Source: Octopus sinensis (Eukaryota). From it: a DNA stretch of 40,714 nucleotides. Every line of letters starts with the position of its first letter. Positions within the stretch are counted from its first letter, which is position 1. Location: assembly GCF_006345805.1 (NCBI RefSeq), contig NW_021835371.1, positions 1 through 40,714 on the forward strand. Direction: 5' to 3'. The notes under the pieces are model-generated. The model did no database searches and was not told the origin of the DNA. It saw only the letters and a program-made list of their open reading frames with translations. The translations under genes were made by a program, and so were the position numbers. Of the stretch, positions 706 to 40,714 are shown in pieces.

Positions 706-781
706 TAAATATACTTTGAGGACAACACTGCCCTTTTTTATAATGGAACTCGAAAAAGTCAGTGAGGGTTCTACTAAAGAG
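706..781 (+). CDS. Candidate 76-nt coding exon of an unknown host gene ((x)KYTLRTTLPFFIMELEKVSEGSTKE)
   Basis: Pyrimidine-rich acceptor ...ctctcaccaaatttccag| at 705; consensus donor GAG|GTAAGT at 781/782; only one frame is open; unique sequence; peptide not recognised. Confidence 0.35.
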
Positions 782-834
782 GTAAGTCTCTGTCATCACG
801 GCTTTCAGCCTCATCTACCATACAATTTCTTAAC

Positions 835-1006
835 CATAATCCTTCCTGTTATAGGCACAAAGCCTGAAATTTTTGGAGAAGGAGCCAGTCGATTAGATCA
901 ACCGCAGTGCGTAACTGGTACTTTAATTTATCGCCCTCGAAAGGATGAAAGGCAAAGTCGACCTCGGTGGAATTTGAGCTCAGAACACGAAGATAGATGA
1001 AATACT
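835..1006 (-). mobile_element. SINE family B body with B2-type tail (headless)
   Basis: Contains gtcgactttgcctttcatcc...gataaattaaagtaccagttacgcactgcggt core on the minus strand; begins exactly where the B1 copy at 1007-1238 ends. Confidence 0.75.
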
Positions 1007-1238
1007 TATTTCTTTACTAGCCACAAGGGGCTAAACACAGAGAGGACAAACAAAGACAGACAAACGGATTAAGTCGATTATATCGACTCCAGTGTGTAAC
1101 TGGTACTTATTTAATCGACCCCGAAAAAAATTAAAGGCAAAGTCGACCTCGGTGGAATTTGAATTCAGAACGTAGCGGCAGACGAAATACTGCTAAGCAT
1201 TTCACCTGGCGCGATAACGTTTCTGCCAGTTCGCCGAC
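1007..1238 (-). mobile_element. tRNA-derived SINE family B, long-tail subfamily B1
   Basis: Head ggcgaactggcagaaacgtta (A box) ... gttctgaattcaaattcc (B box), core, tail ...gtgtttagccccttgtggctagtaaagaaata; near-identical to 31582-31808 and 32682-32911. Confidence 0.85.
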
Positions 1239-1269
1239 TTATTAACGTTAACCTTTTAACAATAATAAT

Positions 1270-2105
1270 AGTTCTTTCCAATTTTGGCACAAGGCTAGTA
1301 ATTTTTAAGGGAATGATAGTCGATTATATTGACTCCAGTACGTGGCCGGTATATATTTTATCGACCCCGAAAATAGGAAAGGCAAAGTCGATCTCGGAGA
1401 AATTTGAACTCAGAATGTAAAGAGTCAAAAGGAGAGCTACTGAGGATTTTGTCCCGCTTGCTGACGAATCTGCCAGGTTGCCGCCTTAAAATTTTGGATA
1501 AAGGGGGTTAGTTGATTACATTGACCCCCAGTGCTCAACTGGTACTTATTTTATCTACTCACGAAAGGATGAGAGGCGAAGTCGAACTCGGCGGAGTTTG
1601 AACTCGGAATATGGAGCTCAAAACAACGGAGATGAAAATGGTGATGATGATAATAATGAGGATGATAACGATGATAATTGTTTTGATGATGATGATGGTT
1701 TCAAATTTTGCCACAAGGGCAGCAGTTTTGGGGGAGGAGTTGTGTCGATTACAATGATCCCAGTGTTCAACTGGTACTTATTTTATCGACCCCAAAGGTT
1801 GAAAGGTAAAGTCGATCTCGACGGAATTTGAACTCAGAACGTAACGACGAGCGTAATACCGCTAAGCACTTTGCCCGGCGTGCTAACGATCCTGCCAACA
1901 CGCCGACGGTATTTGAACTTGGATTACCGCTAAGCATTTCGTCCTGTGTGCTAACGATTCTGCCAACACGCCGCCATAAAATTTTGGTTAAAAGGGATTG
2001 GTTGATTACATTGACTCCAGTGCTCAACTGGTACTTATCTTATCTACCCCCGGAAGGATGAAAGGCTAAGTCGAACTCGGCAGAATTTGAACTCAGAATG
2101 CGAAT
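1270..2105 (-). mobile_element. Cluster of about five full or partial SINE B2 copies separated by (GAT/AAT)n tracts
   Basis: Repeated aaggcaaagtcgacctcggcggaatttgaactcagaac motif near 1380, 1575, 1805 and 2065; heads near 1487, 1900 and 1975. Confidence 0.8.
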
Positions 2106-4144: not shown

Positions 4145-4612
4145 AAGGACGAATTACCGCTAAGCATTTTTTAGCGTGTTAACAATTCTGCCAGCTCGCC
4201 ACCTTAATAATGATGATGATGATGATGATGAGGAGGAGGAGGAGGAGGAGGAGGAGGAGGATAATCCTTTCTACAATAGGCGCAAAGTCTGGATCTTTGT
4301 AGGGACAATCGATTACATCGACCGCAGTGTTTCACTAGTACTTAATTTATGGACCTCGAAAAGATGAAAGGCAATATTCGACCTCGGCGGAATTTGAACT
4401 CAAAACGTAAGAAGGGACGAAATGCCGCTAAGCATTTTGCCCGGCGTGCTAACGATTCTGCCGGATCGCCGCCTTAAATAATAACAATCCTTTCTATTAT
4501 AGGCACAAGGCCTGAAATTTGGAGAAGGAGATAGTCGATTACATCGACCCCATTACTCAGCTGGTGCTTATTTTATCGACCCCAAAAAGGATGAAAGGCA
4601 AAGTCGACCTCA
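4145..4612 (-). mobile_element. Head-to-tail SINE B2 array (partial, full and head-only copies)
   Basis: Copies at about 4487-4612 and 4262-4477 plus a head at 4145-4205, joined by (GAT/GAG/AAT)n linkers. Confidence 0.8.
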
Positions 4613-5399
4613 GATTTAACAATAATCATGATGATGGTATGTGTGTGTGTGTGTGTGTATGTGTGTGTGTGTGTGTGTGTATGTGTGTGTGTGTGTGTGT
4701 GCGTGCGTGTTTGTGTTCGTATATGTGTGTCATAAAGAGAAACAGAGAGGGAGAGAGAATTTTTAAAATTAATATGGCAGTTTAGGGTTATTGTAAAATA
4801 AAGATGAAATAAGAATAAAAATGAAAGAAGCTAAAGGAATGGATTACGAACGTTAAGAAAGTTAGGGATAATGAAGAAGCAGAAAGTGAATAAAAACAGG
4901 AAATTGAAAAGAGAAGAATGGCATAAAAGAGTTAAATATTCAAGAAAAAGGGATATTGAAGCTTTATGAAAGGACCATAGTATAAAAATATTAGTCAATG
5001 ACAGAAGCATAAAATGTAATTATTAATAGGTAAGAATATGTAAAGAAAGAAAATGGAGAAGGTAAACATAGGCTTACAACAAAGCAAATTGTCTAAAAAT
5101 CAATAAAGTAGGATATCGATAAAATGGGAGGTAAAATAAAATAATCCCTTACAAAATCAAAAAGATGGCGGTTAGATGAAAGATGATCGGGGTAAGGTTT
5201 TTCTTTTCTTTGAATCTATCCATGTTTTTTGAAATATTGCTTGTTGCAACCTGAACATTACTGACGTAAAATTGCCTTATATGGAGTTTTTCTTTTCTCT
5301 TCTTTTATTTATCTTATTTTCAGTAGCTCCACCTTAGAATTTCCCATCTACAAATGCTTCTTTCACAGCTCTATGTTTTATGTATTCTATTATTATTCA

Positions 5400-5797
5400 C
5401 TAGCAGTATCGCCCGGCGTTGCTCGGGTTTGTAAGGGAAATAACTATATAAGCATTTTTAGAGATGTAAAGTATAATAGCCTTCTCAATATGGCTAACCA
5501 CAAAAGGGGGCGATGTTACTGTAGCTTTTTACGTTCTGAGATTTAATAATAGATTTTTAGAGAGTTACTTCCCTTATATATGCCAAAAATGCATTAAAAA
5601 TGGGAAAAAATGATGGTAAATTATTTTTTAAATCGTAGACTCATCGTAGACGCGCACTAATACCCAGAAGGGCTCGATATGAATCACGACTATAAGATAC
5701 CCGGTTTTGGTTAAACTGCATCGCAAAATGTGGGAGTAGTTAGGAATCTAAATCGTAGGAGACAGACAGCACACAACCTTACTTTTATATATAAAGA
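5400..5797 (-). mobile_element. Non-autonomous Helitron (copy 1 of 3)
   Basis: On the minus strand: 5'-TC start, 3'-CTAG end, inserted between A and T; GC hairpin CCCGAGCAACGCCGGG about 12 nt before the 3' end. Confidence 0.85.
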
Positions 5798-5863
5798 TAT
5801 TCTAACGTTTTCTGGGCGCAATCGCGAGATCGAAAATACACTACACTATGAAATGAAATTAGT

Positions 5864-6548: not shown

Positions 6549-6706
6549 TGCGCATGGTGGTAAAAACCTTACTTCCCAACCACATGGCTCCGGGATCAAT
6601 CCCACTGCGTGTCACCTAGAGCAAGTGTTTTCTACTGTGGCCTCGGGCCAATCAAAGCCTTATGACTGGATTTGGCATACGGAAACTGGAAGAAGCCCTT
6701 CGTATG

Positions 6707-6749
<43 letters not shown>

Positions 6750-6944
6750 GCCCCACCACCGCTCGAGAACTGATGTTGATGTTTTTACGTCCTCGTACTT
6801 AGCGGTTTGGCAAAATGGACCAATAGAATAAGTACCAGATTTTTAAAAAATAAGTACTGTGCTCGATTCAATCAACTAAATATTCTCCAAGGCATTGCCC
6901 CAGCATGATCGCACTCAAATGACTAAAACAAATAAAAGATAAAA
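6549..6944 (+). mobile_element. SINE family A, diverged variant with internal (TG)n
   Basis: cccaaccacatgg...cccactgcgtg head, ggaaactggaagaagcc, internal microsatellite, tagaataagtac core, ccccagcatg tail. Confidence 0.75.
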
Positions 6945-7295: not shown

Positions 7296-8455
7296 TTCAT
7301 ATATGCTCAACAGATTAGACTGTTGGATAAGAAAAGAATCCTGACATTGGGCTACGAGTAGTCTTACATGCTAAGAACCCTCCTAAGTATCCTAGCTGTC
7401 CCTAATAACACTGTTTTCTGCAACTGTACTAAACTGAGTTTTGTGCCTATTTCCTCTATCCATCTGTTCAGATCCTTAGGGATAGTTCCCAATGCACCTA
7501 TAACTGCTGGGATACTTGTTACCCGCACTTTCCATAGACTCTGTAATTGAAAAGCTAGGTCCTAGTGCTTTGCTATTTTTTCTCTACTTCTTATATCAAC
7601 ATCTTCAGAATTTGGGACTGTAAAGTCAATCACCGGGCACTTTCTATTCCCTTTATCTACTACTAGCAACTCAAGCCTTCTAACTTCTATTGCTCTGTCA
7701 GTCTGAATGTTAGAGTCCCACAACATCTTGTATTTCTTACTTTCTAGTACTTTACTAGGTTCATGTTCATATCATTTATCAGTATGTTCAAATCCTAGCT
7801 TTCTGCATAGCTCCCAGTGGATTGCCCTCCCTATGTTGTCTTGACTTTTCTTGTATTCTCTCTGTGGCAGCATGATGCATTCACTTACTATATGAGTAAC
7901 GCTTTCCTCGTTTGACTTACATAACCTACATTGGGAATCTACTTGATGTTTGTCTATCTTGGTTTTTATCCAATTAGTCCTTAATGCTTAATTTTGTGCA
8001 GCTACTAACAAACTTTCTGTCTCCCTCTTCGGCTTTCCTTTCTGCAACCATAACCATGTCTCACTACTTATTGTTTGCTGCAACAATCTTTGGGAATCTG
8101 CCATGCAACGTTTTCTCCTGCCAGTCAGATAATTTCTAGATCTTTTTTTTTTTTTTTGGTTTTCAACTTCGTTTGGGTTTTTGGTTTTCCTGTCTTGCTG
8201 TGACTCTAGCAGCTTTTAATAAACTTTCTTCACCATTACCTACATAGGAGTCTATATCTACTCTAGCTATCTCCACGCAGTTTTCTACTGATGTTAACCC
8301 TCTTCCGCCTTCCTTTCTAAGAAGGTGTAATCTTGCTACTCCTGCCCTTGGGTGGAGTCCTCCATCTATATTGCATTCCCGCCTAGCTTTCCCTGCTTAG
8401 CTTTGCTGATTTAGATTTTGTCCAATCTACAAAAGCTGCTGAGTATCTAAGTAAT
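7296..8455 (-). mobile_element. 5'-truncated, decayed RLE-type non-LTR retrotransposon (Dong/R4-like): RT C-terminus, CCHC knuckle, restriction-like endonuclease
   Basis: Manual minus-strand translation gives ...CRLCKSNEESVTHIVSEC...IHWELC...K*YEHEP...LWDSNIQTDR...LLVVDK...KCPVIDF...DLAFQLQSLW...IGALGTIP...LQKTVLLGTARILRRVLSM* (stop at 7364-7366), with in-frame stops. Confidence 0.85.
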
Positions 8456-9151: not shown

Positions 9152-9310
9152 CTCAGTTTTAGTACCAATAGAAAAAACCATCGTCTACAATATATATTGA
9201 GTACTCCTTTTCAATTTGTCTGACATAAACCAATGTACGAATTATATATAATCCTAGGTGTATACTAATGTGTGTGCGCGTACACGCACACACACACACA
9301 CACACACACA

Positions 9311-9495
9311 CGAAGGAGGGGTGCTGAAAACTTCCTAGCTTTAAGGGTATCACGAGAGGTCTGGATGGAGGCCCAACCTTCCGTGTTCTGTTACAGAGCT
9401 TAGAAAAACTGAAGGGCCGCTGCAATATGTGTATGAATCTGAGAGAGGAATAAGTTGAATAAAATCATAATTAATTGATCTTCTATTTTCTTTAT

Positions 9496-9497
<2 letters not shown>
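9311..9497 (+). mobile_element. Internally deleted mariner remnant
   Basis: TIR-like gaggggtgctgaaaacttcctagcttt plus degenerate transposase end LEKLKGR(C)N(M)C(M)NLR(E)E*VE*, similar to the mariner ...RW.KC....G.YVE* terminus. Confidence 0.6.
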
Positions 9498-9541
<44 letters not shown>

Positions 9542-9794
9542 TGTGTGTGTGTGCGTGAACTATCTCGAGCATTTTATTGTTCTTATGCGTTTGAGTTTTT
9601 TGGTTTTTCTGTTGAAAATGAAACTCGTGTCGTGAGACATTCTCATTTTAGATTTTAAAAAAAACATCGTATCTTCCTCTACATGTATTGAGAACTCCTC
9701 TCCCATTCGTCCGACATAGCTCAATGCTCGTATATATATATGTGTATGTGCGTATGTGTGGTAATATATACCATTAACACGTCACAGTTTTCAA

Positions 9795-9832
9795 CTTATT
9801 CATTTTACTTTTTCTTTCTTTTTCAGGTAAGT
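9795..9832 (+). promoter_or_regulatory. Candidate recursive splice site (zero-length exon, 3'SS-5'SS AG|GT)
   Basis: CTTAT branch-like motif 9795-9799, tract ttttactttttctttcttttt, CAG 9824-9826, immediately followed by GTAAGT 9827-9832. Confidence 0.6.
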
Positions 9833-10289
9833 ACTTTCCTACATGAACGATATTGATTTTCAAAGTTCGGATCTTGGTCTGTACAATACTGTTTCTTTTT
9901 TTTCTTTTCTGCTTTCAACTTTCTTTTATACATATTTCCGCTTGTAAATTCTTTAACTTGTTTATATATCTGTACATGAAACAGTCTGTGTATATTCGCG
10001 GAGTTTGTGTGTGTGCGTGAAACCGTTGATATGTTTTATATTTATTTGATTTATAAAAATCTCCTCTATTGGAATATGGATAATTTTTTTTAAAGTTATA
10101 TGCAGAATATTAGAAAATTCTTGAATATTTTCACCGTTCCACTTACAGTTTTTATTTTCAGAATATTTAGATCTTTTAAGAGATTGTTTATATATATCAT
10201 TGCCAGAAAATCTCGACAATTCGTGTAAATGTAAACTGACTCAAAGTATACTTGAAATATTTGCTTCCGGTAAACATCTTTTAACATTA

Positions 10290-10537
10290 GGTTATTGCTG
10301 AAATTGATGGATCAATCATACAAGTGGCGATTAGAATGTCACAGGAAAGAATTGCAAGACGGATTCTTCGAGCCGAGGAAACTGGCAGGAGACCTAGGAG
10401 TAGACCAAGAACGAGACGGTTGAATAATATCCATAGTCTCAGGTGATCATGTTTGGAAATCCAACCGGAGGCGTCTGAGGACACTACACAATAACCCTCC
10501 CAGGAATAGCAGGTGGAGAAGATGGTTGGATGGATGT
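10290..10537 (+). mobile_element. 3' end of an RTE-like LINE
   Basis: Frame from 10333 reads RMSQERIARRILRAEETGRRPRSRPRTRRLNNI, resembling the G.RPRGRP..RW RT C-terminus; ends in a ggttggatggatg tail. Confidence 0.65.
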
Positions 10538-10839: not shown

Positions 10840-11210
10840 GTGCAGGGAACCCATACATTTAAGTATGGTACTCCATTCAATGATGTTACTCCATTCAATT
10901 TATTTGTGAAGATTGGATCTATCTATACTCCGATGTGCAAACTGGTCAGCTTAATATCGCATTAGAAGGATGTATGGATATAATATTCACACTGAGCTTA
11001 TCAACTGAACCGTTGTTTTTATCTAGTGGATACATGTTTCTTTTCTGTACAGTTATTCCTATGCTTGCAGAATCTTTCACCTATACTCTGAGCTGTTTCT
11101 CCCATATATGTTTCAGGGAGATTTCTAATTGGTCCTTCTTGGCATCATATATGATATATTGTGGGTCCAACTTTGCTTTGATCTCAAAATTATCTGTCTT
11201 TAACAGATGA
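10840..11210 (-). mobile_element. Highly decayed GIY-YIG endonuclease relic (Penelope-like)
   Basis: Minus strand reads ETYMGETAQSIGERFCKHRNN (compare YIGET...RF.EH) and downstream SEYR*I; frameshifted. Confidence 0.45.
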
Positions 11211-13189: not shown

Positions 13190-13707
13190 GTGGTTCTCAA
13201 GCGAGGTTCATATGATTCTTGGGAGTTCATATAAGACTTTTCGGAGTCTGCGGCAGTATTTTAGAGGTTAATGAAAAACTTTTATTTTGTATTTATAACG
13301 AAAAAAAGAAAAGAAAGAAAGAAAGAAAGAAACAGGTTCACACAGTTCAATATGTTTTCAGTCAGTGAAACATATTCTCTCAGAAAGTATGTCCGGTAAG
13401 TTCACCGTTATCAATTCACCGGGTTTTTTTTTTTTTTTTTTTTTGTTTTTGGTCATTTTTTTTCACAATAAAATAGCTTTTAACTATTAATAGTGAAATA
13501 CTATGGATTATATTTTCTCGGTAAACTTTCCTCCCAGTAAGCTTTTCTCACGAGGAGTGAACTTTCACTGCGGCGAATTAATGGCGTTGAACTTACCTGT
13601 AATCCTCGGAGAGTGCTATTGCAAACCCACGCAAGTGAATAGGTGATAAATAAAATAACAATTTTGAAAGAACTATCTATAAAACTTGTTTTTAAGCATC
13701 AAAAGAT
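13190..13707 (+). mobile_element. Older interrupted hAT-type MITE copy
   Basis: tagtggttctcaa start; internal segments (ttcatataaga..., ttttgaaagaactatctataaaa) match 13708-14066 and 30976-31321. Confidence 0.5.
13395..13597. mobile_element. Small IR-bounded non-autonomous element nested in the hAT copy
   Basis: Perfect 10-bp inverted repeats ggtaagttca (13395-13404) / tgaacttacc (13588-13597). Confidence 0.45.
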
Positions 13708-20770: not shown

Positions 20771-21004
20771 GCAGTATCATACAATGGGCAATCATGTCTC
20801 TTATACACTACTGTACCGCTTATCTGGCTTCCGGAAATCCGGGAACGTTGTGCAATATTGTGCAATGTACCCTCTATTGGCCAAACAGATCCTGTTGGCT
20901 AAATTGCATACACCGTGTTAAAACTAGGTTTGGTCTATACTTTTTTATGTGAACTAATAAGCACTAAACATACTCTGCTGAAGAAGTGTTTTGATTTGTG
21001 TCTA

Positions 21005-21400
21005 TCTTTATATATAAAAGTGAAGTTGTGTGTCAGTCTCCTACGATTTAGATTCCTAACTACTCCCACATTTTGCGGTGCAGTTTTACCAAAACCGGGT
21101 ATCTTATAGTCGTGATTCATATCGAGCCCTTCTGGGTATTAGCGCGCGTCTACGATGAGTCAACGATTTTTAAAAAATTTAACATCATTTTTTTCCATTT
21201 TAATGCATTTTTTCGCTATTATATAAGGGAAGTAACTCTCTAAAAATGTCTACGATGAGTCAACGATTTTTAAAAAAATTTACCATCATTTTTTTTCCAT
21301 TTTTAATGCATTTTTTGCTACTTTTTGGCTATAACTCTCTAAAAATGCTTATATAGTTATTTCCCTTACAAACCCGAGCAACGCCGGGCGATACTGCTAG
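21005..21400 (+). mobile_element. Non-autonomous Helitron (copy 2 of 3)
   Basis: A|TCTTTATATATAAAAG ... hairpin CCCGAGCAACGCCGGG (21373-21388) ... CTAG|T. Confidence 0.9.
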
Positions 21401-21739
21401 TATCTGTTAAATAAAATCACGTTCTTCATTCTTCTTCGTTTAATTTTCATTATATAAACATTATACTGTATAATGGTTCAATATAATGTATTTTAAGAAT
21501 TTTTAGACCCTACTTAAGAAATTTATTAATTTGAATCTGTTAAATAAAATTCAGTTCTTTTCTTTTCATAGTTCGTTTTATACTAAAAGAAAACCCCAAA
21601 AAAAAACCCAGAAATCTGGATTACTTCCAGCCCCAAGTTTGCCGTATATATTGCCCGGTACTATATTAATATAGAGCACTGGTTCCTAAACATTTCGAGC
21701 TGTTACCCCCTTCGCACCCATGCCACGTTCCTAATTCTT

Positions 21740-22380: not shown

Positions 22381-22617
22381 TACTCTTTTACTCTTTTACT
22401 TGTTTCAGTCATTTGACTGCGGCCATGTTGGAGCACCGCCTTTAGTCGAGCAAATCGACCCCGGGACTTATTCATTGTAAGCCCAGTACTTATTCTATCG
22501 GTCTCTTTTAGCTGAACCGCTAAGTGGCGGGGACGTAAGCACACCAGTATCGGTTGTCAAGCAATGCTAGGGGGACAAACACAGACACACAACCACAGAC
22601 ACACAAACCACACACAC

Positions 22618-22653
<36 letters not shown>

Positions 22654-22816
22654 GACAGGCTTCTTTCAGTTTCCGTCTACCAAATCCACTCACAAGGCAT
22701 TGGTCGACCCGAGGCTATAGCAGAAGACACTTGCCCAAGATGCCACGCAGTGGGACTGAACCCGGAACCATGTGGTTGGTTAGCAAGTTACTTACCACAC
22801 AGCCACTCCTGCGCCT
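22381..22816 (-). mobile_element. Full-length SINE family A (tRNA head, internal microsatellite, (GAGTAAAA)n tail)
   Basis: Near-identical to 28424-28838 and 36778-37190; approximate TSD atttattt/atttgttt. Confidence 0.9.
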
Positions 22817-23099
22817 ATTTGTTTATTTTTGTGAATCCTGAAAGTGGTGGTGGTGGTGATGGTGGTGGCAAAGGGTGTGGGGGAGTTTGTGAATGGATGG
22901 GAGGGATTTGAGGACAGGAGATCAAGCTGTAGAAACTCGCTTTAACGCAGTAATTCCAACTGTTCCATTAAAGGATTAAAGTACTTTGGTGGAAACTTTT
23001 TTAAAATTCTTCATGTTAAAGGCTGCCAGTATGTGCGCAGGCGCGCGCGTGTTTGTGTGCGTGTGTGTATGTGTGTGTGTGTGTGTGTGGAATGCTATA

Positions 23100-23685
23100 A
23101 TGATGATGGTGATGATGATAATGATGAGCAGTGGTATTTATTGGTGATGGCGGAGACTGCAAGCCAAACAAAAAAATAGGTGGTAGTGGTGGTTGTGGTG
23201 GTGGTGGTGGTGGTGGTGGTTTTGGTGGTGGTGGTGGTGGTGGTGATGGCGGCGGTAGTGATTGTGGTGGTGGTGGTAGTGGTGGTGGTGGTGGTGGTAG
23301 TGGTGGTGGTGGTGGTGGTGATGGCAACGGTGGCGGTGGCGGTTGTAGTAGTGGGGGCGGCAATTATGATGAATCATCCTTCCAGACAGCACGTTTCACT
23401 GATGGTGATGTTGTGATGGTGATGGTTTAAAAGCCCTTCTACTGTGCAATATTGTTGTTATGACGATGATGACGACGACGATGATGATGATGATTGTGAA
23501 GATGGTTGTGAAGATGGTTGTGATGATGGCGATGATGATCACCATCATCGTCGACAACAGCGTCATAAGAGTAATAAGTAATAAACATATTAGGAATGAC
23601 CATGATGATGTAGATGACGATGATGATGATGGTGGGGGGGTGATGATGGTGGTGGTGGTGTTGGTGGTGATGATGGTGATGATGG

Positions 23686-23716
<31 letters not shown>

Positions 23717-24078
23717 GGTGGTGTTGATGATAATGACGACGATGAGGATGATAATGATGGTGGTGGTGGTGGTGGTGATGGTGGTGATGATGATGATGGT
23801 GGTCGTCGTCGTCGTGATGATGATGGTGGGGTGATGATGATGATGATATGTGATAGCTTATCCTTTCTATCTAATGCTTTTGTAATGATGATGATGACAT
23901 AGTGGTGATGCTGTGGCTTTCAAGACTCTTTTTCTGATGGTGATGACTGGGTTTTATATTGTACCGTTGTTGTTGTTGTTGTAATGATGACAATGATGAT
24001 GGTTGGTTTTGATATTGGTATTTGTCTTTATATAGTAAGTAGTACAGTTTATTACCGTGGTGGTAATGATGCTGCTGC

Positions 24079-24110
<32 letters not shown>

Positions 24111-24960
24111 ATGAGGATGATGATGATGATGACGATCATGATGGTGATGATGAAAGTGGTTAAGGATGAAGCGCTTCTTTTTGTCGTTGTTGTTATTGTT
24201 GTTGTTGTTGTGATGGTGGTGGTGGTGGTAGTCGTCGTCGTCGTCCCCGTCTCGGCTAATTAGTTAGAGCCACACGTGGGTAGATAGCAATGATGGAGAT
24301 GACGATGATGATGACGATGGTGATGACGATGGTGATGATGATGATGATGATGACGACGACGATGATGATGACGATGACGATGATGATGATGATGACGATG
24401 ACGACGACGACGACGATGATGATGATGATGATGATGATGATGACGATGATGATAATGATGATGATGATGATGATGACGATGACGATGACGATGATGATGA
24501 CGATGATGATGATGATGACGATGATGATGACGATGATAATGATGACGATAATGATGATGATGATGATGATAATGGTGATGAGGATGCTGATGATGACGAC
24601 GATGAGGATGATGATGATAATGGTGATGAGGATGATGATAATGGTGATGAGGATGATGATGAGGATGGTGATGATCGGGCTAGAAACGGCGCTAGAGATG
24701 GTGGTGGTAGTGGTAGTGGTGGTGGTGATGATAATGATAAAAGTGATTAAGTTTGAAGCGCTTCTTTTCGGTTCTTGTAATGGTGGTGGTTGAGATAAAG
24801 TGGTATTTAGGGGGGGGACTGGTGGTGGTGGTGGTGGCACTGGTGGTGGTGGTGGTGTTGCTGGTGGTGGTGCTGGTGGTGTTGCTGGTGGTGGTGGTGC
24901 TGGTGGTAGTGATGGCTTGTTGTATTCGTAGGGTTGTGGGGCTGGTGCGGACGGTAGAGG
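23100..24960. repeat. About 1.8 kb mosaic of (GGT), (GAT), (GAC), (GCT) and (GTT) trinucleotide repeats
   Basis: Directly visible; source of the poly-M/V/P/H/I ORFs. Confidence 0.9.
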
Positions 24961-25217
24961 CGTAACTTGTTGCGTGATTGATATAGGATCGAATACAACG
25001 GACAGTTTTGTTTATGTATGTTGCGTTGTGGTATTGTATATGTGTGTGTGTAATATATATATGGTACACACACACACAGATGCACACACGCCTGTATACG
25101 TGCGTGCAGTCACATGATTTCACTATAACTCACCCCCACTCCTATTTACACGCGTGTTGTATATGTATGTGTATGAACAGATGTGTGTATGCGTATGTAT
25201 ACATATGTTTGTCTCTT

Positions 25218-26196: not shown

Positions 26197-26249
26197 CAGA
26201 TTCTCTTATTCTTTTGTTTCAGCCATTGGATTGCGACCATGCTGGGGTA

Positions 26250-27583
26250 TCGACATATGCCCACAGGTCGGAGATTGTTGGACACTGCACGATTGCGTGC
26301 AGAACGGTTTCGTCGCTCTGCCCGCATCTAGGGCAGGTCGGCCCCGTGTTTCTCGAGCCATGCCTATAGAGCTTATCCTGAACGGGTAGCGCTTCTCGGT
26401 AGCACTGCCAGGCCAGGGATCTCTGGAAGTTGTCCATAGGTCCCGGCCTGAAAGTCGTCTCAAACAGGCGGGTCAGGTATTCCTCGTCGACGCCCAGGTT
26501 TGCCTCAAGATCGTCGTCGTACCTCCCCTCCACTAATCCCCTATAGAATGCTTTGGTTGTGTTGAAGTCACTCAAGGTTGACCCGGGACGGCAGAGTTGC
26601 TTGAGAGCAACGCGACACTCGCGGTGCCATTCGCCCTTCCTCGGCCTCTTTTTGATCCACGACTGCAGTTCGGTCGTGGAGACGAGCTGCGGGAATGCGT
26701 GCCTCACAAACGGCGACCACACCTGTTCACCGTCGTTCCACAAGAAGCCGAAGAGAATGCGTTCTAGTTTGGTGATGGTAGGGTCGGGACAATGTACGAC
26801 GGTCAGGCGGTAGTAGATGATGGACGCGATGTACGTGTTCGCCACCTTCGCCCGACCTTTTAGGGACAGTTTCCTCTCGGCCCATTGCCGGGCGAGAGTG
26901 ACCACCCTACTCGTTATCTCGTTCCAGTTCTTCTCCATTTGGAGGTCCGGACCGAACCAGACCCCGAGCAACTCAACTGGGCCGTCCGTCCAGCGTCCCA
27001 CGACGGAGGTACTGGTGGACGGCATGGGCTTGCTTCTCCAGGTACCGAGCTGCAAGCCCACTTTTCCCGGTTAATTTTCGCTCCTGTCACCGCTTCGTAG
27101 TCTTTCAGTGTCTCGCCGACCAGCTCGATGTGCTTGTGGCTTGACACTATGACGGTGACGTCGTCCGCGTATGCAGACAAGCTCGTCCCGCATCCCAATT
27201 CTCGCGGGATGCCCCTGAGTCGTAGTAGTGACTCGAGGGTCAATACGTATAGAAGCGACGAGAGGGGGCATCCCTGATGGACCGAACGTGCAATGTCGAA
27301 AGGTCTCGATAGATGTCCATTTACACGAATTACCGAACGGATGCCTCTGTACAAGGCAGCTATCCAGCCGCGGAAGACGGGACCTAAACCAGCCGCTCTC
27401 AGGACTGCCTCCAAGTATCGATGTTCTACCCTATCGAAGGCTTTCGATTGATCCAAATTGATCAGGGCCCCACCCATGCCAAGTTCCTTAACTACTCTGT
27501 CTATGATGTAGCGCATCAGATGGAGGTTGCCATGGATGCTCCGGCCCGGCAAGACGCACGTTTGCGCCTTTTCGACCAGTTTC
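26250..27583 (-). mobile_element. L1/Tx1-clade LINE ORF2 fragment (RT domain to CCHC), frameshifted and truncated at both ends
   Basis: ORF 26914-27552: LDQSKAFDRVEH, SVHQGCPLSSLLYVL, YADDVT, GAKINREK; frameshift near 27062; ORF 26219-27061: VELLGVWFG, LSLKGRAKVANT, LFGFLW, CPRCGQSDETVLHAIVQC; visibly more GC-rich than the flanks. Confidence 0.9.
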
Positions 27584-28423: not shown

Positions 28424-28838
28424 AGGCGCAGGAGTGGCTGTGTGGTAAGTAGCTTGCTAACCAACCACATGGTTCCGGGTTCTGTCCCACTGCGTGGCAT
28501 CTTGGGCAAGTGTCTTCTGCTATAGCCTCGGGCCGACCAAAGTCTTGTGAGTGGATTTGGTAGACGGAAACTGAAAAAAGCCTGTCGTATATATGCATAT
28601 ATATATATATGTATGTGTGTGTATATGTTTGTGTGTCTGTGTTTGTCCCTCTAGCATTGCTTGACAACCGATGCTGGTGTGTTTACGTCCCCGTCACTTA
28701 GTGGTTCGGCAAAAGACCCCGATAGAATAAGTACTGGGCTTACAAAGAATAAGTCCCTGATCCGATTTGCTCGACTAAAGGTGGTGCTCCAGCATGGCCG
28801 CAGTCAAATGACTAAAACAAGTAAAAGAGTAAAAGAGT
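28424..28838 (+). mobile_element. Full-length SINE family A
   Basis: As for 22381-22816. Confidence 0.9.
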
Positions 28839-29280
28839 ATATAAGGTACATAATAATCACAGATACATACATTCATATACCTCCCTTGTACACACACACT
28901 CACACGGAGTTGAAACGCTGTTTGATTTTTCTTTTTAGCGTTGATTGTTCATCATCCTACTTCCATTGCACGCACACACACGCGCAAACACATACACACA
29001 AACACAGACATACACGCACACATTCATATGACTCCCTTTTACATACACAAACGTGCCCCAGCATGGCTGCAGCCTCAAGGCTAAAACATATAAAAAAGTG
29101 AAAGAATAGACTCACCGCTGAGCTGAAACGTTGTTTGATTTTTTCTTCACCGTAGAACTTCCATCATCCCGCTACCAAGTTTGCCATCACCGCTTCCTTC
29201 CCCATTCATCTATCACCCCTTCCTTTCTCGTTTATATGTTGTGACGGAGGAATACGCGAGAGTATTATTATAGCAGATTA

Positions 29281-29571
29281 GGCGCCGAGCTGGCAGAAAC
29301 GTTAGCATGACGGGCGAAATGCTTAGCGGTATTTCGTCTGTCGCTATGTTCTGAGTTCAAATTCCGCAGAGGTCGACTTTGCTTTTCATCCTTTCGGGGT
29401 CGATTAAATAAGTACCAGTTACGCACTGGGGTCGATGTAATCGACTTAATCCGTCTGTCTGTCCTTGTTTGGCAAAGTCGACCTCGGCGGAATTTGAACT
29501 CAGAACGTATTGGCAGGCGAAATACCGTATTGGCAGGCGAAACGTGCTAACGTTTCTGCCAGCTCGCCGCC
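29281..29571. mobile_element. Adjacent inverted pair of SINE B copies (+ then -)
   Basis: ggcgccgagctggcagaaacgttagca...gaggtcgactttgc then gcaaagtcgacctcggcgg...tgctaacgtttctgccagctcgccgcc. Confidence 0.85.
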
Positions 29572-30466
29572 TTCGTTACTTACCACTCCTAAAACCACCC
29601 CAGTTGCTAGAAATTCGATGTGCATCAGTCTGGAGACACCAGAAGAGTGTACACATAACCATTTCTCATTTCTCGTGTTAGAATTTTGGTTTTGGTCGAT
29701 GTTTTTCCCCACCAGAGAAGAACCAAAGCACGCCATGATCATGAATGGTTTTAACCTTGATAAATAACCAATTGGCACTGATCAAACGTTTTACCTGTGT
29801 CTTTGCCGACATAATTGGCTTCTCACTAAACACGACAACAGGATAATATAAATGATATGAATAAGTGTTTGTACAGATAATCCATCAACGGATTATAAAC
29901 TGCAATTCGAAAGATTCACCTTTTGTCATACACAATGTGATATGCTAATTTTGTTTGTAAATTAATTACATTAAAGATACGCGTACCTGGCCTGTGGAGT
30001 ATTCAGCCACTTAAGCTTTAATTCAGTTGATCGAACAACTAAAATCTCAAGGTCAGATGTTCTGACCGAGATCCATTTTTGTTGTTGCTAGGAAACAACA
30101 CCGACCGCTTCCATTGTACTTCTCCCCGAGTCAGTTTGCTTGGAACACTGCTGCTGCACAACGGTGCAGTGGGCCGTGTGTGTGTGGGGGGGGGAGTGAG
30201 TGTGTGTATTTGCAGCTGCATTTGTGAATGTGTGTAAGAGTGTGTCTGTGTATGTGTTTGCTTGTGTATATGTGAGTGTATGTATGTGTATGTAAATGCG
30301 TGCATGTACATATCTGCGTGCACGTACATATCTGTGTGTCTCTATATACGTATGTGTCTGTGTGTTTGCGTGTTTATGTATGTATGCGTGTGTGTAGGTA
30401 GATATGTAGGAGTGAGTGTAAGCGCGCGCGCGCGCGTGTGTGTGTGTTCATAAACCTGAAATATAG

Positions 30467-30772: not shown

Positions 30773-30960
30773 GGCGATCCTTCGGTATAGGTACCGTAAG
30801 TACCGGAAGTGGCTTTGTTTACATTTCTGAAGATAATAGAAACCCTTTTCTCCCACCCCTAACCCTAACACAAACCCTAACCCTAACCCCCATATATATA
30901 AAAAAAAACACTATCTTGATATGTATCCGGTTCTTCCGGTACCTATACCGAAGTTACGCC
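30773..30960. mobile_element. IR-bounded non-autonomous element containing (CCCTAA)n
   Basis: Perfect 17-bp IR cttcggtataggtaccg (30780-30796) / cggtacctataccgaag (30937-30953), outer ggcg/cgcc; four CCCTAA units at 30858-30890. Confidence 0.65.
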
Positions 30961-31321: not shown

Positions 31322-31581
31322 TTGTAAACGAGAGAAATCTCGGCTGGTGTCGGAAAGATGAATGTATTGTACAAGCGATACATTGCGATAGGGGCGAAAA
31401 AACGACAGTGTTTGCTGTGGTAATTGGTTGTTGCTTGCCTTTTTAGTTTGGAAAGAAGGCAGCGCTAATAACCCTTTACAACGGCTCCGAGACTGGAAGG
31501 GCAAAGAGGGAGGAATAAATTTATCCCCTGGCTGTGCTTACCAACCACATGGTTTCGGGTTCAGTCCCACTACATGACACC

Positions 31582-31808
31582 TATTTCTTTATTACCCACA
31601 AGGGGTTAAACACAGAGGGGACAAACAAGGACAAACATAGGTATTAAGTCGATTACATCGACCCCAGTGCGTAACTGGTACTTAATTTATCGACCCCGAA
31701 AGGATGAAAGGCAAAGTCGACCTCGGCGGAATTTGAACTGACAACGTAACGCAGACGAAATACCGCTAAGCATTTCGCCCGGCGCGCTAACGTTTCTGCC
31801 AGCTCACC
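31582..31808 (-). mobile_element. SINE B1 inserted into the head of a SINE A copy (about 31535-31840)
   Basis: A head ...cccactacatgacacc| resumes as ...gcaagtgtctgctactatagc after the B1 copy. Confidence 0.85.
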
Positions 31809-32259
31809 GTGTGCAAGTGTCTGCTACTATAGCACCAACCAAATGGTGGTGTTAAACCGGGCGACAGTTTAAGTATGTCAGGAGTTGTTTCATGTCATAA
31901 TTATTCTCATAATTGTGATACCATTAAGGACGAAAGAGAAGTGGTTTTATGTCGTAATTGTTCTCACATTTGTGATACCATTAAGGAAGTAAGTTATTTA
32001 TTAAGTAACTAGAAAAGAAAAAAATGTTGGTCCTCTTGTTGATGTGTGTGAATAGTGATTCTACATATCAACACCGATACTCCAGAAAAGAAACGTGGAT
32101 GCTGTAACTTAGCAGTTGGCAAAGAGAAAACGATAAAATTAGTATGAGAATGAAATTAGTACTGTGGAGGAGATGACACATGAAAGACTAAACTCTTGAA
32201 CACGTGCTCCAGCATGGTCGGGGCCTTGTGACTAAATCTAATAAAACAGTGTTTCAAAT

Positions 32260-32460: not shown

Positions 32461-32681
32461 AAATCCTGTAAAAATTATAAAGAATAAGTATGTATTTCAA
32501 TTCAGATAGAAACCCGCCCATCTTCCAAGCAGTTGCTTTGCTTTGGAACAATCATGTGGTTTCGAGTTTGTTCCTATTGCACGGCGTTTTGGGTGCCTCC
32601 TACTTCAGATTCCGCTTCCGGTCAACCCAAGCCCCATGGGTAAAAATCGGCTTGGTGGGAACCTGCCAGATTAACTGTACC

Positions 32682-32911
32682 TATTTCTTTATTACCCACA
32701 AGGGGTTAAACACAGAGGGGACAAACAAGGACAGACATAGATATTAAGTCGATTCCATCGACCCCAGTGCGTAACTGGTACTTAATTTATCGACCCCGAA
32801 AGGATGAAAGACAAAGTCGACCTCGGCGGAATTTGAACTCACAACGTAACGCAGACGAAATACCGCTAAGCATTTCGCCCGGCGTGCTAACGTTTCTGCC
32901 AGCTCGCCGCC
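32682..32911 (-). mobile_element. Full-length SINE B1 with TSD
   Basis: 11-bp direct repeat ttaactgtacc at 32671-32681 and 32912-32922. Confidence 0.9.
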
Positions 32912-33348
32912 TTAACTGTACCACTTTTCAGAGTGGACACGAATCGGTGCTCTGGTTTTCACTCCTTCACCTGACCCTTGGATGTGCCTTTAGCGAAGCG
33001 AGGACCAAGTCCCTAATCTGAGAATAACGCAATATGGCTATTCTTACTACATCAACCGATAGGCCACGGTTATTTCCGGTTTGAGTATGCCTTCCTTTAT
33101 CCACCAGACTCCATTATCTGCCTTTGCACAGTTTCTACGGTTGGATGCCCTCCCCAACCCCAATCACTTTACAGAGGGAACTGGGTGCTTTTTATGTGTT
33201 ACAGACTACACCAGTCATGAGTAAACGAAGGCCCACGGGACTTTCCGAATGGCACGCTTAATGAAAAGTTACCTTGAATTTTTGTAGTAGTGCGGCCTGT
33301 ATGACGATGACCATATCTGCACTACATACTGTATGCCATTCCTAACAG

Positions 33349-36174: not shown

Positions 36175-36777
36175 TTTTCTCTATGAAGCGCACAGCCGAA
36201 TACTTACGCACACACATACACATATGCAAGTACTGTGTGTATGTGTGTGTATGTATTTTCTAGAGTGCATAATTTCTTGGTTTAAACAATACACTACCCA
36301 CACACACATATATATACACATATATATACATGCACAAATGAACTACAAGATGGACAAAGTACGAGTGCGCATGCACACATAAAAAACTAAGTGGAATGGT
36401 GATAGAGAGAAGGTTGCCTTTTGTCCATCTCTCTCTTTTGTCCATTTCTCTCTATCTATCTACCTCTCTATCTATCTTAGAATATATTTTGAAATAAAGT
36501 GTACTTTCGTACAAATCTCCGTTGTCATTGGTAACAATGCAAATAATCTATCAAAAAGGGTCAGTAAACGTCTTATATCAATGACCTAATGACCCTTCCG
36601 TGCAATTGATGATAACATATCGAACCCGATCATAGAAATTTCTGAAACAAAATAAAAAGTATAATTAATAGAAAAAGTATTTCTTGATTCAAAAACAATA
36701 ATTCTTTCGTTCTTTTAAGGCATTACCGCTTTTTTTTTATAAGAAATATTCATAGAAATTTAATTAAAATACTCAAC

Positions 36778-37190
36778 AGGCGCAGGAGTGGCTGTGTGGT
36801 AAGTAGCTTGCTTACCAACCACATGGTTCCGGGTTCAGTCCCACTGCGTGGCATCTTGGGCAAGTGTCTTCTGCTATAGCCTCAGGCCGACCAATGCCTT
36901 GTGAGTGGATTTGGTAGACGGAAACTGAAAGAAGCCTGTCGTATATATGTATATACATATGTATGTGTATGTATGTCTGTGTGTCTGTGTTTGTCCCCCT
37001 AGCATTGCTTGACAACCGATGCTGGTGTGTTTACGTCCCCGTCACTTAGCGGTTCGGCAAAAGACACCGATAGAATAAGTACTGGGTTTACAAATAATAA
37101 GTCCCGGGGTCGATTTGCTCGACTAAAGGTGGTGCTCCAGCATGGCCGCAGTCAAATGACTGAAACAAGTAAAAGAGTAAAAGAGAGTAA
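36778..37190 (+). mobile_element. Full-length SINE family A
   Basis: As for 22381-22816. Confidence 0.9.
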
Positions 37191-37244
37191 CGAAATTGAT
37201 AAAGAACAATAAAAACTTAGTCATACCATATTTGGTAAAATTAA

Positions 37245-38168
37245 GGCGACGAGCTGGCAGGATCGTTAGCACGCCGGAAAAATTGCTTAGCAGCATTTCT
37301 TCCGGTTTTATTGCTCTGATTTTAAATTCTGCCGAGGTCGGCTTTGCCTTACATCTTTTGGGGCTGATAAAATAAGTGCCAGTTGAACACTGGGGTCTAT
37401 GTGATTGACTTACCCCCTCCACGAAATGGCTAGTTCCGTAACAAAATTTGGAAACATTATTATTAGTAGTAGCAATATTAACGTGATGAGTTGGCAGAAG
37501 AGTCAGCACGCCAGACAAAATGCTTAGCGGCATTTCTTCCGGGCATTTTGCCCTGAATTCAAATTCCGCTGCGGTCAACTTTGCTTCTCATCCTTTTGCA
37601 GTCAATAAAATAAGTATCAGTTTAAGTGCTGGAATCGATGTAATCCACTAGCACCCTCCCACACACCTCATCGCAGCCCACAACATTTCAGGCCTAGTGA
37701 TATAGTCGGAGTATCGACCCCTTGGATAACCGCATAGACAACCCAACCTCCACCACCTCAGAAGTCAGTATTTATCACTTCGAGCTGGCAGAAACGTTAG
37801 CACACCGGGAGAAATGCTTAGCAGTAATTCGTCTGCAGTTACGTTCTGAGTTCAAATTCCGCCGAGGTCGACTTTGCCTTTCATCCTTTCGGGGTCGATT
37901 AAATAAGCACCAGTTACGCACTGGGGTCGATATAATCGACTTAATTCGTTTGTCTGTCCTTGTTTGTCCTCTCTGTGTTTAGCCCCTTGTGGGTACTAAA
38001 GAAATAGGTATTTCGTCTGCCGCTACGTTCTGAGTTCAAATTCCGCCGAGGTCGACGTTGCCTTTCGAGGTCGATTAAATAAGTACCAGTTACGCACTGG
38101 GGTCGATATAATCGACTTAATCCGTTTGTCTGTCCTTGTTTGTCCTCTCTGTGTTTAGTAAAGAAATA
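37245..38168 (+). mobile_element. Same-orientation cluster of four SINE B copies (two B2, then a tandem B1-B1)
   Basis: Heads near 37245, 37487 and 37781; a headless body starts at 38007 directly after the aaagaaata tail. Confidence 0.85.
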
Positions 38169-38721: not shown

Positions 38722-38783
38722 TGAACTAGCAATTGGATGGTATGCAATCTCTCCGCCAATTCATATCGCCAGCGCGATCGCAA
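38722..38783 (+). CDS. Candidate 62-nt coding exon ((x)ELAIGWYAISPPIHIASAIA)
   Basis: Acceptor cctccggttttccgtgctttcaacag|, donor CAA|GTGAGT; only one frame is open; unique sequence; peptide not recognised. Confidence 0.35.
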
Positions 38784-38815
38784 GTGAGTAAACACACAGA
38801 CACACACACGTAGTA

Positions 38816-38976
38816 TCTTCTTTGCAACAAAATACAGCAAGTTTCATGCTGGGCGGAAGATACCTGGCCCAGCTTAGATCAAGGTCTGATAATTGCCAAG
38901 TTGGTTTGCAACAGCTTGATGTAAGCAGGACCAGATATCTTCCTCTCAGCATGAAAGTTATTTGTTGCAAGAAAGA
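38816..38976. ncRNA. Long imperfect RNA-hairpin-forming inverted repeat
   Basis: 38842-38883 pairs gap-free with 38915-38956 (36 WC, 1 GU, 5 mismatches on +); outer ttgcaacaaa/tttgttgcaa. Confidence 0.45.
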
Positions 38977-39049
38977 CATTGCATGCGAAATATTAACTCT
39001 CAATTTTATCGAGTGCTTTATTTCACTGAACCTGTCGACAAACGAACAG

Positions 39050-39385
39050 TACACTAGACTGCGGCCATACTGGGGCACTCCCTTGAAGAATTTTAGTCGA
39101 ATAAATCAACCCCAATTCTCGGCACTTATTCTACCGATCTCTTTTAACGAATAGCTATGTTACAGGAAATAAACACTCTAACACGTGTTGTTAAGCGGTG
39201 ATGGGGAAAGACGCAGATATACACATACATATATATACACGACGGGCTTCTTTTTTTAGTTTTCGTCTACCAAATCCACTCACAAAACTTTGGTCAGCCC
39301 GAGGTTATAGCAGAAGACACTTGCCAAAGGTGCCAGACAGTGGTACGAAGTTAGGAAGCAAGTTTCTTACCACACAGCCACTCCT
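39050..39385 (-). mobile_element. Diverged SINE family A copy
   Basis: gactgcggccatactggggcac...cttattctaccgatctc 3' half plus ccgtctacc-type/ccacacagccactcctg head on the minus strand. Confidence 0.7.
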
Positions 39386-40077: not shown

Positions 40078-40175
40078 ATCCGGTTTCTGACTGAAGATCA
40101 AAGGCTTCGAATGACCCGTCTGTTTTCTGTGTTCGTCCCTTTGTGTATTTCACGTTCTTGTTTCTTTATATATAA

Positions 40176-40578
40176 CTAGCAGTATCGCCCGGCGTTGCTC
40201 GGGTTTGTAAGGGAAATAACTATATAAGCATTTTTAGAGAGTTATAGCCAAAAAATAGCAAAAAAATGCATCAAAAATGAAAATAAAATTATGGTAAATT
40301 TTTTTTTAAATCGTTGACTCATCGTAGACATTTTTAGAGAGTTACTTCCCCTATATAATAGCGAAAAAATGCATTAAAATGGAAAAAAAATTATGGTAAA
40401 TTTTTTTTTAAAGCGTAGACTCATCGTAGATGCACGCTAATACCCAGAAGGACTCGATATGAATCACGACTATAAGATACTCGGTTTGGGTTAAACTGCA
40501 CCGCAAAATGTGGGAGTAGTTAGGAATCTAAATCGTAGGAGACAGACACTCACACAACTTCACTTTTATATATAAAGA
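40176..40578 (-). mobile_element. Non-autonomous Helitron (copy 3 of 3)
   Basis: A|CTAG...hairpin...AAAGA|T on +, i.e. TC...CTAG on - at an A|T target. Confidence 0.9.
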
Positions 40579-40714
40579 TTTTTATACCTATATATACATA
40601 TATATATATATGTATGAAATTGATAGATAACTTAAACGTGTGGAATAGTCTTTTGTACCCGAGCCAGTCCAGCAGCTCTTAAAATTTTTTTGTGTTAATA
40701 ATTAAATAGTTGCG

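What the first reader, a model, noticed from the sequence alone, without database searches (positions are those of the whole stretch)
9795..9832. Strong recursive-splicing (ratchet point) motif in a cephalopod-like giant intron
Seen: branch-like CTTAT, then ttttactttttctttctttttCAG|GTAAGT. This is a strong 3' splice site fused with zero spacing to a perfect 5' splice site, in non-repeat sequence; no other site of this quality was seen on either strand. Established: Drosophila long introns are removed stepwise at such AG|GT zero-nucleotide exons, and vertebrates use RS-exons. To my knowledge this has not been characterised in molluscs. Inference: it would split the putative intron after donor 782 into 9,045-nt and about 20.6-kb steps.
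Basis: partly seen in the sequence, partly recalled or inferred. Interest (0 to 1): 0.8.

Follow-up and report, generated by a model that had tools for sequence, protein, structure and literature searches.

The report
Perfect recursive-splice-like motif, function unproven
The window really does contain a textbook "acceptor fused to donor" splice motif in what looks like octopod DNA, but a site this good is expected by chance about 800 times per genome. Nothing here shows that it lies in a transcribed intron, so it is a candidate, not a discovery.

Summary
At 9795-9832 (+) the sequence reads CTTATTCATTTTACTTTTTCTTTCTTTTTCAG|GTAAGT. It is the best 3' splice-site match of 4568 AGs and ties for the best 5' splice-site match of 4959 GTs in the window, fused at 9826|9827, in non-repeat DNA.

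Keeping the window's real pyrimidine tracts, a site this good is expected 0.013 times per window. That is about 800 per 2.5 Gb genome, so one such hit in a multi-window scan is unremarkable.

The recursive-splicing reading could not be tested:
- No coding exon, host gene or transcribed strand could be established. Pfam found nothing and two searches of 5.8 billion proteins found no homologue.
- No credible downstream donor defines an RS-exon.
- No orthologous sequence or RNA data was reachable.

An octopod origin is supported: the LINE and both SINE families are shared with an Argonauta hians locus.

My best reading is a chance juxtaposition in T-rich unique DNA (about 0.65). A genuine ratchet point remains possible (about 0.2) and would be the first reported in a mollusc. 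It would be a known mechanism in a new taxon.

The parts
9795..9808 (+). Three overlapping branch-point-like YTNAY motifs: CTTAT (A9798, -29), TTCAT (A9802, -25) and TTTAC (A9807, -20)
   Evidence: Read directly. The positions fall in or next to the -36..-21 window reported for Drosophila ratchet-point branch points (10.1101/006163). Usage was not tested.
9803..9823 (+). Polypyrimidine tract TTTTACTTTTTCTTTCTTTTT, 20 of 21 pyrimidines, with T at -5 and -6
   Evidence: TRF does not call it a tandem repeat. About 5.7% of plus-strand positions carry a tract of at least 16 of 20 pyrimidines, so such tracts are common here.
9824..9826 (+). CAG, a 3' splice-site-like trinucleotide; the putative junction lies after G9826
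   Evidence: The acceptor PWM scores 15.7 bits, rank 1 of 4568 AGs on both strands. The zone from 9788 to 9824 is free of AG.
9827..9832 (+). GTAAGT, a 5' splice-site-like hexamer; with the preceding CAG it forms the full 9-nt U1-complementary consensus
   Evidence: The donor PWM scores 12.6 bits, tied for first of 4959 GTs. CAGGTAAGT occurs only twice in the window.
9833..9950 (+). Stretch where a cryptic RS-exon and its donor would be expected; only weak donors are present (TTG|GTCTGT at +50, 2.0 bits; CTT|GTAAAT at +117, 2.5 bits), and stop codons occur in all three frames within 39 codons
   Evidence: No RNA structure stands out (z = 0.1).
779..787 (+).
   Evidence: It scores 11.6 bits, third best plus-strand donor. 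The 13-codon ORF in front of it (745-781) has no homologue.
7362..8400 (-). Frameshifted 3' part of a LINE ORF2, the nearest identifiable element upstream of the motif (context)
   Evidence: 76 homologues at 32-55% identity carrying RVT_1 or zf-RVT domains.
26219..27552 (-). LINE reverse-transcriptase fragment (context; used to place the taxon)
   Evidence: Pfam RVT_1 at 4.8e-19 and zf-RVT at 4.7e-08. The best named relative is from Argonauta hians. It shares 73% nucleotide identity with the LINE in L002.

Best explanation
This is most likely a chance juxtaposition. A T-rich tract, of a kind common in this AT- and T-rich, microsatellite-laden octopod DNA, happens to be followed by CAGGTAAGT. 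The sequence looks like an ideal ratchet point, but there is no evidence that it sits in a transcribed intron or is used by the spliceosome. If the plus strand is transcribed, U1 and U2AF would very probably bind it. That binding is an inference from the consensus, not something shown here.
For: A site at least this good is expected 0.013 times per window and about 800 times per 2.5 Gb genome (consistent). Observed counts at looser thresholds match expectation: 2 against 2.0 at 8 bits or more, and 1 against 0.88 at 9 bits or more. So there is no wider plus-strand enrichment.

Pyrimidine tracts are frequent locally; 5.7-6.2% of positions have at least 16 of 20 pyrimidines.

No host gene was found. 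The non-TE ORFs of 40 residues or more (7,225 aa) gave no Pfam family. The ORFs around the site gave no homologue. The 56 unique ORFs on both strands plus the guessed exon peptide gave none either. Rfam and ARAGORN found no RNA gene or tRNA.

T/A and G/C skews vary in sign along the window once repeats are masked.

No credible donor lies 20-300 nt downstream to define the cryptic RS-exon. Current models require such an exon in flies and vertebrates (PMC8605326; PMC6224609).

The background density of such sites on non-coding strands is about 0.1 per 100 kb in every animal examined (PMC2773006).
Against: At the level of this one window the site is improbable (p about 0.013). It combines the single best acceptor with the joint-best donor.

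It has all the specific ratchet-point hallmarks:
- T at -5 and -6, found in 99.5% of fly ratchet points.
- Branch-point-like adenosines at -29, -25 and -20.
- An AG-free zone upstream of the acceptor.
- A full GTAAGT donor.

A strong same-strand donor lies 9 kb upstream, a spacing within the 2.6-63.6 kb range of fly recursive segments.

All five invertebrates examined by Shepard et al. showed 4-22-fold sense-strand enrichment of such sites in large introns. If cephalopods behave the same way, a large share of perfect motifs would be functional.

Failure to find a gene is weak evidence, because the window could lie wholly inside an intron.
Confidence: 0.65

Rival explanations
1. It is a genuine zero-nucleotide recursive splice site (ratchet point) in a long intron of a plus-strand gene. 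An upstream exon is first spliced to G9826|G9827. That regenerates a consensus donor, from which the rest of the intron is removed in a second step.
For: The sequence matches the (Y)nNCAG|GTAAGT consensus perfectly, with T at -5 and -6 and branch-point candidates at -20 to -29. It is unique in the window, with a window-level expectation of 0.013. It lies in non-repeat DNA. A strong same-strand donor lies at 782, giving a first segment of 9,045 nt, within the fly range. [quoted passage not shown]
Against: No evidence exists that the plus strand is transcribed or that the window lies in an intron. No downstream donor of more than 2.5 bits defines an RS-exon. Conservation could not be tested. About 800 equally good sites are expected by chance per genome. 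Repeat-rich vertebrate genomes with similarly long introns show almost no enrichment.
Confidence: 0.2
2. It is the edge of an unannotated exon, such as a non-coding, alternative, poison or cryptic exon. Either the acceptor at 9826 is used with a weak donor downstream, or GTAAGT at 9827 is the donor of a T-rich upstream exon.
For: Both half-sites are individually the best in the window. Weak donors exist at +50 and +117. All three frames after 9826 close within 39 codons, which would fit a non-coding or poison exon.
Against: The flanking ORFs have no homologue. The upstream stretch contains a TA/TG microsatellite-like run at 9733-9760 and has no good acceptor of its own. The downstream donors score 2.5 bits or less.
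Confidence: 0.08
3. It is a U1 snRNP docking site with no splicing role, for example one that suppresses premature cleavage and polyadenylation in a long transcript, or acts as a decoy site. The adjacent tract would be incidental.
For: CAGGTAAGT is fully complementary to the 5' end of U1 snRNA (established knowledge). AATAAA and ATTAAA hexamers are plentiful on the plus strand, 42 and 24 copies.
Against: Nothing suggests selection. It explains only half of the motif. Transcription of the strand is unproven.
Confidence: 0.05

Closest known systems
Drosophila zero-nucleotide ratchet points (Hatton 1998; Burnette 2005; Duff et al., 10.1101/006163)
   Same: It has juxtaposed acceptor and donor around AG|GT, a prominent pyrimidine tract, T at -5 and -6, a GTAAGT donor, and branch-point candidates about 20-30 nt upstream. 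The hypothetical segment sizes (9 kb, about 20 kb) fall within the fly range.
   Different: Fly sites are defined by junction reads, saw-tooth coverage, lariats and strong conservation, and lie in annotated introns longer than 11 kb. None of that is available here. Fly sites are also followed by a roughly 50-nt cryptic RS-exon with its own donor (PMC8605326), which is not evident here.
Vertebrate RS-exons (Sibley 2015; Blazquez 2018, PMC6224609)
   Same: It would regenerate a 5' splice site after the first splicing step, in a repeat-rich genome with long introns.
   Different: Vertebrate recursion depends on exon definition through a downstream donor. The best candidates here score only 2.0-2.5 bits.
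Background 'RP-sites' on antisense strands and in intergenic DNA (Shepard et al. 2009, PMC2773006)
   Same: A motif-only match with no supporting transcript evidence. The reported background is about 0.1 per 100 kb per strand, in line with my estimate of 0.15 per 100 kb per strand at 11 bits or more.
   Different: This example sits at the very top of the score range rather than just above a threshold.
Cryptic acceptors created by T-rich tracts, such as antisense-retroposon tails in Alu exonization (own knowledge)
   Same: A strong acceptor arises from a T-rich, low-information tract followed by CAG.
   Different: No retroposon body could be identified next to the tract, so this origin is conjecture.

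Membership tests
Zero-nucleotide recursive splice site (ratchet point) | Acceptor and donor consensus fused at AG|GT: (Y)nNCAG|GTAAGT | tested here: met
   15.7-bit acceptor and 12.6-bit donor, the best joint site on either strand.
Zero-nucleotide recursive splice site (ratchet point) | T at -5 and -6 (196 of 197 fly ratchet points) | tested here: met
   T9821 and T9822; the criterion comes.
Zero-nucleotide recursive splice site (ratchet point) | Branch-point adenosine about 21-36 nt upstream, with no intervening AG | tested here: met
   A9798 (-29) and A9802 (-25) lie in YTNAY contexts, and 9788-9824 is free of AG. This is sequence only; usage was not tested.
Zero-nucleotide recursive splice site (ratchet point) | Lies on the sense strand inside a long intron (longer than about 11 kb in flies) | tested here: inconclusive
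No exon or gene was detectable on either strand. Skews are inconsistent. CpG o/e is 0.82, so there is no sign of gene-body methylation.
Zero-nucleotide recursive splice site (ratchet point) | Followed by a short cryptic RS-exon (about 50 nt) ending in a usable donor | tested here: not met
   The best downstream donors within 300 nt score 2.0 bits (+50) and 2.5 bits (+117). The PWM is approximate, so a weak donor cannot be excluded.
Zero-nucleotide recursive splice site (ratchet point) | Sharp conservation peak at the site across related species | not testable with these tools
   No orthologous locus was reachable. There were no called proteins near the site, the 26-mer is absent from metagenome contigs, and the one octopod locus obtained (L002) is not orthologous.
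Zero-nucleotide recursive splice site (ratchet point) | Exon-to-site junction reads, saw-tooth nascent-RNA coverage and recursive lariats | not testable with these tools
   No RNA-seq data were accessible.
Vertebrate-type RS-exon | Acceptor followed by a regenerated donor plus a competing downstream donor that defines an exon | tested here: not met
   no donor above 2.5 bits lies between +4 and +161.

The most novel reading that the evidence does not exclude
The site is a working ratchet point in a long intron of an octopod gene. That would be the first recursive splice site documented in a mollusc or any lophotrochozoan. It would imply that stepwise intron removal at zero-length exons is ancestral to bilaterians and still serves the very long introns of cephalopods.
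Probability: 0.2. Interest if true: 0.6.

Novelty: not a real feature. Interest (0 to 1): 0.2.

Why it matters
If it were real, it would extend recursive splicing from insects and vertebrates to molluscs. It would also offer a handle on how cephalopods process very long, repeat-filled introns, many of them in neural genes.

As it stands, the value is methodological. A perfect ratchet-point motif is expected about once per 80 windows of this composition. Single motif hits therefore cannot carry the claim. The genome-wide sense-versus-antisense count is the test that would.

Tried and rejected
1. Finding the same or an orthologous locus through called proteins. Exact look-ups of the 85-aa ORF next to the site and of the 280-aa LINE ORF found nothing on record. 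A homologue search with all ORFs between 9563 and 10311 gave no hits. The LINE fragment 1.4 kb away gave only hits at 55% identity or less.

2. An exact 26-mer across the junction was absent from JGI metagenome contigs.

3. Exon hunting. Pfam on 7.2 kaa of unique ORFs found nothing. A homologue search with 56 unique ORFs plus the guessed exon1-exon2 peptide also found nothing.

4. Rfam and ARAGORN found nothing. The minus strand reads ACTTACCTG, like the 5' end of U1 snRNA, but it diverges straight afterwards and Rfam reports no U1, so I rejected a U1 pseudogene.

5. Strand inference from T/A and G/C skew looked promising on raw sequence (+4.9% and +4.3%). It collapsed to +2.9% and -0.2%, with changing signs, once repeats were masked.

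6. CpG o/e of 0.82 shows no gene-body methylation signal and is uninformative about strand.

7. A TE-borne origin of the motif is unsupported. There is no intra-window copy and no match in the A. hians locus.

8. RNA folding around the site gave z = 0.1.

9. A block-wise shuffle simulation timed out. I replaced it with the analytic estimate.

10. I tried to reach long annotated octopod genes for a sense/antisense enrichment test. The long proteins among the hits came from a pseudoscorpion and a fish.

Full report
**What is there**

- The tract at 9803-9823 is 20 of 21 pyrimidines.
- T occupies positions -5 and -6.
- There is no AG between 9788 and 9824.
- Three YTNAY motifs place candidate branch adenosines at -29, -25 and -20.
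- CAG|GTAAGT is the full nine-base consensus complementary to U1 snRNA (established knowledge).

**Is it more than chance?**

Within the window it stands out.
- The strict pattern YYYYYYYYNCAGGTAAGT occurs once, and never in 100 dinucleotide shuffles.
- CAGGTAAGT occurs twice against 0.36 expected. The other copy, on the minus strand at 13591-13599, has no pyrimidine tract.
- I used approximate metazoan consensus matrices written from general knowledge, not trained on this organism. The acceptor is the best of 4568 AGs and the donor ties for the best of 4959 GTs on both strands.
- The joint score of 12.6 bits compares with 8.9 for the runner-up.

Pyrimidine tracts are common here: 5.7% of plus-strand positions have at least 16 of 20 pyrimidines. 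I therefore kept the window's real tracts and modelled only the ten-base tail with an order-2 Markov chain.
- Sites of 12.6 bits or more are expected 0.013 times per window on both strands, which is about 800 per 2.5 Gb.
- Sites of 10 bits or more are expected 0.36 times, and sites of 8 bits or more 2.0 times.
- The observed counts are 1, 1 and 2.

Apart from this one site, the window looks like its own null. A scan that reads many windows will meet such a site about once in 80.

**Context**

The site is in unique sequence. No intra-window repeat covers 9560-10300 and no tandem-repeat array covers the tract.

The surrounding window is heavily repetitive.
- 211 tandem-repeat arrays and several interspersed families cover 43% of it.
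- A frameshifted LINE ORF2 tail lies at 7362-8400 on the minus strand.
- A LINE reverse-transcriptase fragment lies at 26219-27552 on the minus strand (Pfam RVT_1 and zf-RVT).

**Taxon**

- The exhaustive representative search with the 280-aa LINE ORF gave, as its best named relative, hypothetical proteins of the octopod Argonauta hians at 58% identity.
- A 23-kb A. hians locus (L002) shares the LINE at 73% nucleotide identity.
- L002 also shares both of the window's main SINE families. One has a 60-nt core that is 91-97% identical.
- More distant named relatives come from a pseudoscorpion and a fish at 31-33% identity.

'Cephalopod-like' is therefore supported, although the species is not A. 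hians.

**Is there a host gene on the plus strand?**

I could not show one.
- 104 non-TE stop-to-stop ORFs of 40 residues or more (7,225 aa with spacers) gave no Pfam family at E of 0.05 or less.
- All ORFs between 9563 and 10311 gave no homologue among 5.8 billion proteins.
- That database does contain annotated octopod proteins, so an annotated exon of reasonable length would probably have been seen. Short exons and untranslated exons would not.
- The donor at 782 is good: GAG|GTAAGT scores 11.6 bits, third best on the plus strand.
- Every AG near 30.4 kb is a poor acceptor, at 2.4 bits or less.
- Raw T-over-A and G-over-C skews look like those of a sense strand. After masking repeats they fall to +2.9% and -0.2% and change sign along the window.
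- CpG o/e of 0.82 shows no gene-body methylation signature.
- Rfam and ARAGORN found no embedded RNA genes that could give an orientation.

**Fit to what is known of recursive sites**

Duff et al. (10.1101/006163) report the following for flies:
- 197 ratchet points, in introns of 11-133 kb.
- Recursive segments of 2.6-63.6 kb.
- T at -5 and -6 in 99.5% of sites.
- Branch points mostly at -36 to -21.
- Strong conservation.

The sequence-level features are all met here, and the hypothetical 9.0-kb and roughly 20-kb segments would be ordinary.

Joseph and Lai (PMC8605326) state that intronic ratchet points are associated with a short cryptic RS-exon of about 50 nt. That exon has its own downstream donor and must be recognised before splicing. 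Here the best downstream donors within 300 nt score only 2.0 bits (+50) and 2.5 bits (+117). By my approximate matrix this feature is not met.

Shepard et al. (PMC2773006) give the key calibration.
- Background density is about 0.1 site per 100 kb per strand in all animals.
- Sense-strand enrichment in large introns is 4-22-fold in five invertebrates.
- Enrichment is 0.9-1.5-fold in vertebrates.
- No mollusc was examined.

No paper in the library links recursive splicing with cephalopods beyond one incidental co-occurrence. A 2024 preprint lists only flies, mice and humans as species where recursive splicing has been seen.

**Weighing**

If octopods resemble the invertebrates studied, several hundred perfect functional sites could exist alongside about 800 chance ones, and the posterior for a random perfect motif would be roughly 0.3-0.5. 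If they resemble vertebrates, whose repeat-rich long introns they share, it would be about 0.05.

Averaging those priors and discounting for the missing RS-exon donor and missing gene evidence, I put a genuine ratchet point at about 0.2. I put some other splice-related role at about 0.1-0.15 and a functionless chance motif at about 0.65. These are judgements, not computed posteriors.

**Verdict**

The interpretation cannot be decided with the data reachable here. If it were true, it would be a known mechanism in a new phylum rather than a new kind of system. Interest is low until the site is placed on an annotated assembly and checked against total RNA-seq and orthologous introns.

Noticed in passing
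window 887-2095, 4148-4611, 29274-29573, 31579-31809, 32678-32923, 37233-38157: A roughly 240-nt SINE-like family has 19 copies or fragments in 40 kb, 14 on the plus strand and 5 on the minus. Ten same-orientation fragments are packed head-to-tail at 887-2095 and 4148-4611, which looks like a SINE-derived tandem array. The family is about 75-79% identical to copies in the Argonauta hians locus L002 (19803-19941, 22244-22382).
   Followed up: partly
window 28424-28837, 36766-37185, 22383-22829 (-), 6557-6944 and others; L002 984-1043: A second family of about 420 nt has at least 10 copies. Its roughly 60-nt core (CGACAGGCTTCTTTCAGTTTCCGTCTACCAAATCCACTCACAAGG...) is 91-97% identical between the window and A. 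hians, while the flanks diverge. Each window copy is preceded by a TA microsatellite. ARAGORN found no tRNA and Rfam found no match.
   Followed up: partly
window 5381-5799, 21003-21401 (opposite orientation), 40159-40579: Three copies of a roughly 400-nt element, 92-93% identical, carry internal repeats of about 100 nt.
   Followed up: no
window 38807-38985 (ORFs 38764-39105 on the minus strand and 38792-39151 on the plus strand): A hairpin-like inverted repeat has 45-nt arms, 84% complementary, 31 nt apart. Both strands stay open for about 115-120 codons and encode similar peptides. It may be a foldback or MITE-like element. No homologue was found.
   Followed up: partly
window 9282-9312 and 9497-9557: A (CA)n run and a (TG)n run face each other 184 nt apart, 97% complementary over 31 nt. 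They lie 270-540 nt upstream of the motif and could pair in RNA or DNA.
   Followed up: no
window 30850-30890: A short interstitial run of telomere-type CCCTAA repeats (TTAGGG on the other strand).
   Followed up: no
window 11022-11144 (-): An ORF scrap, ...TYMGETAQSIGERFCKHRNN..., resembles a GIY-YIG endonuclease motif of Penelope-like retroelements by eye. Pfam and the homologue search gave no hit, so this is unconfirmed.
   Followed up: partly
window 23000-25000: A strongly strand-biased, G-rich low-complexity block (GC skew up to +0.61) has long Gly-, Pro- and His-rich ORFs on both strands. It is probably expanded simple repeats.
   Followed up: no
L002 5723-6421, 11741-12439, 17740-18438: In the A. 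hians locus the LINE segment recurs three times at a spacing of about 6 kb, so the element sits in a tandem duplication there.
   Followed up: no
whole window: Tandem repeats cover about 24% of the window (211 TRF arrays). Adding interspersed repeats and the two LINE fragments (masked by hand) brings coverage to about 43%. CpG o/e is 0.82 in unique DNA and 1.0 in the SINE-like copies.
   Followed up: yes
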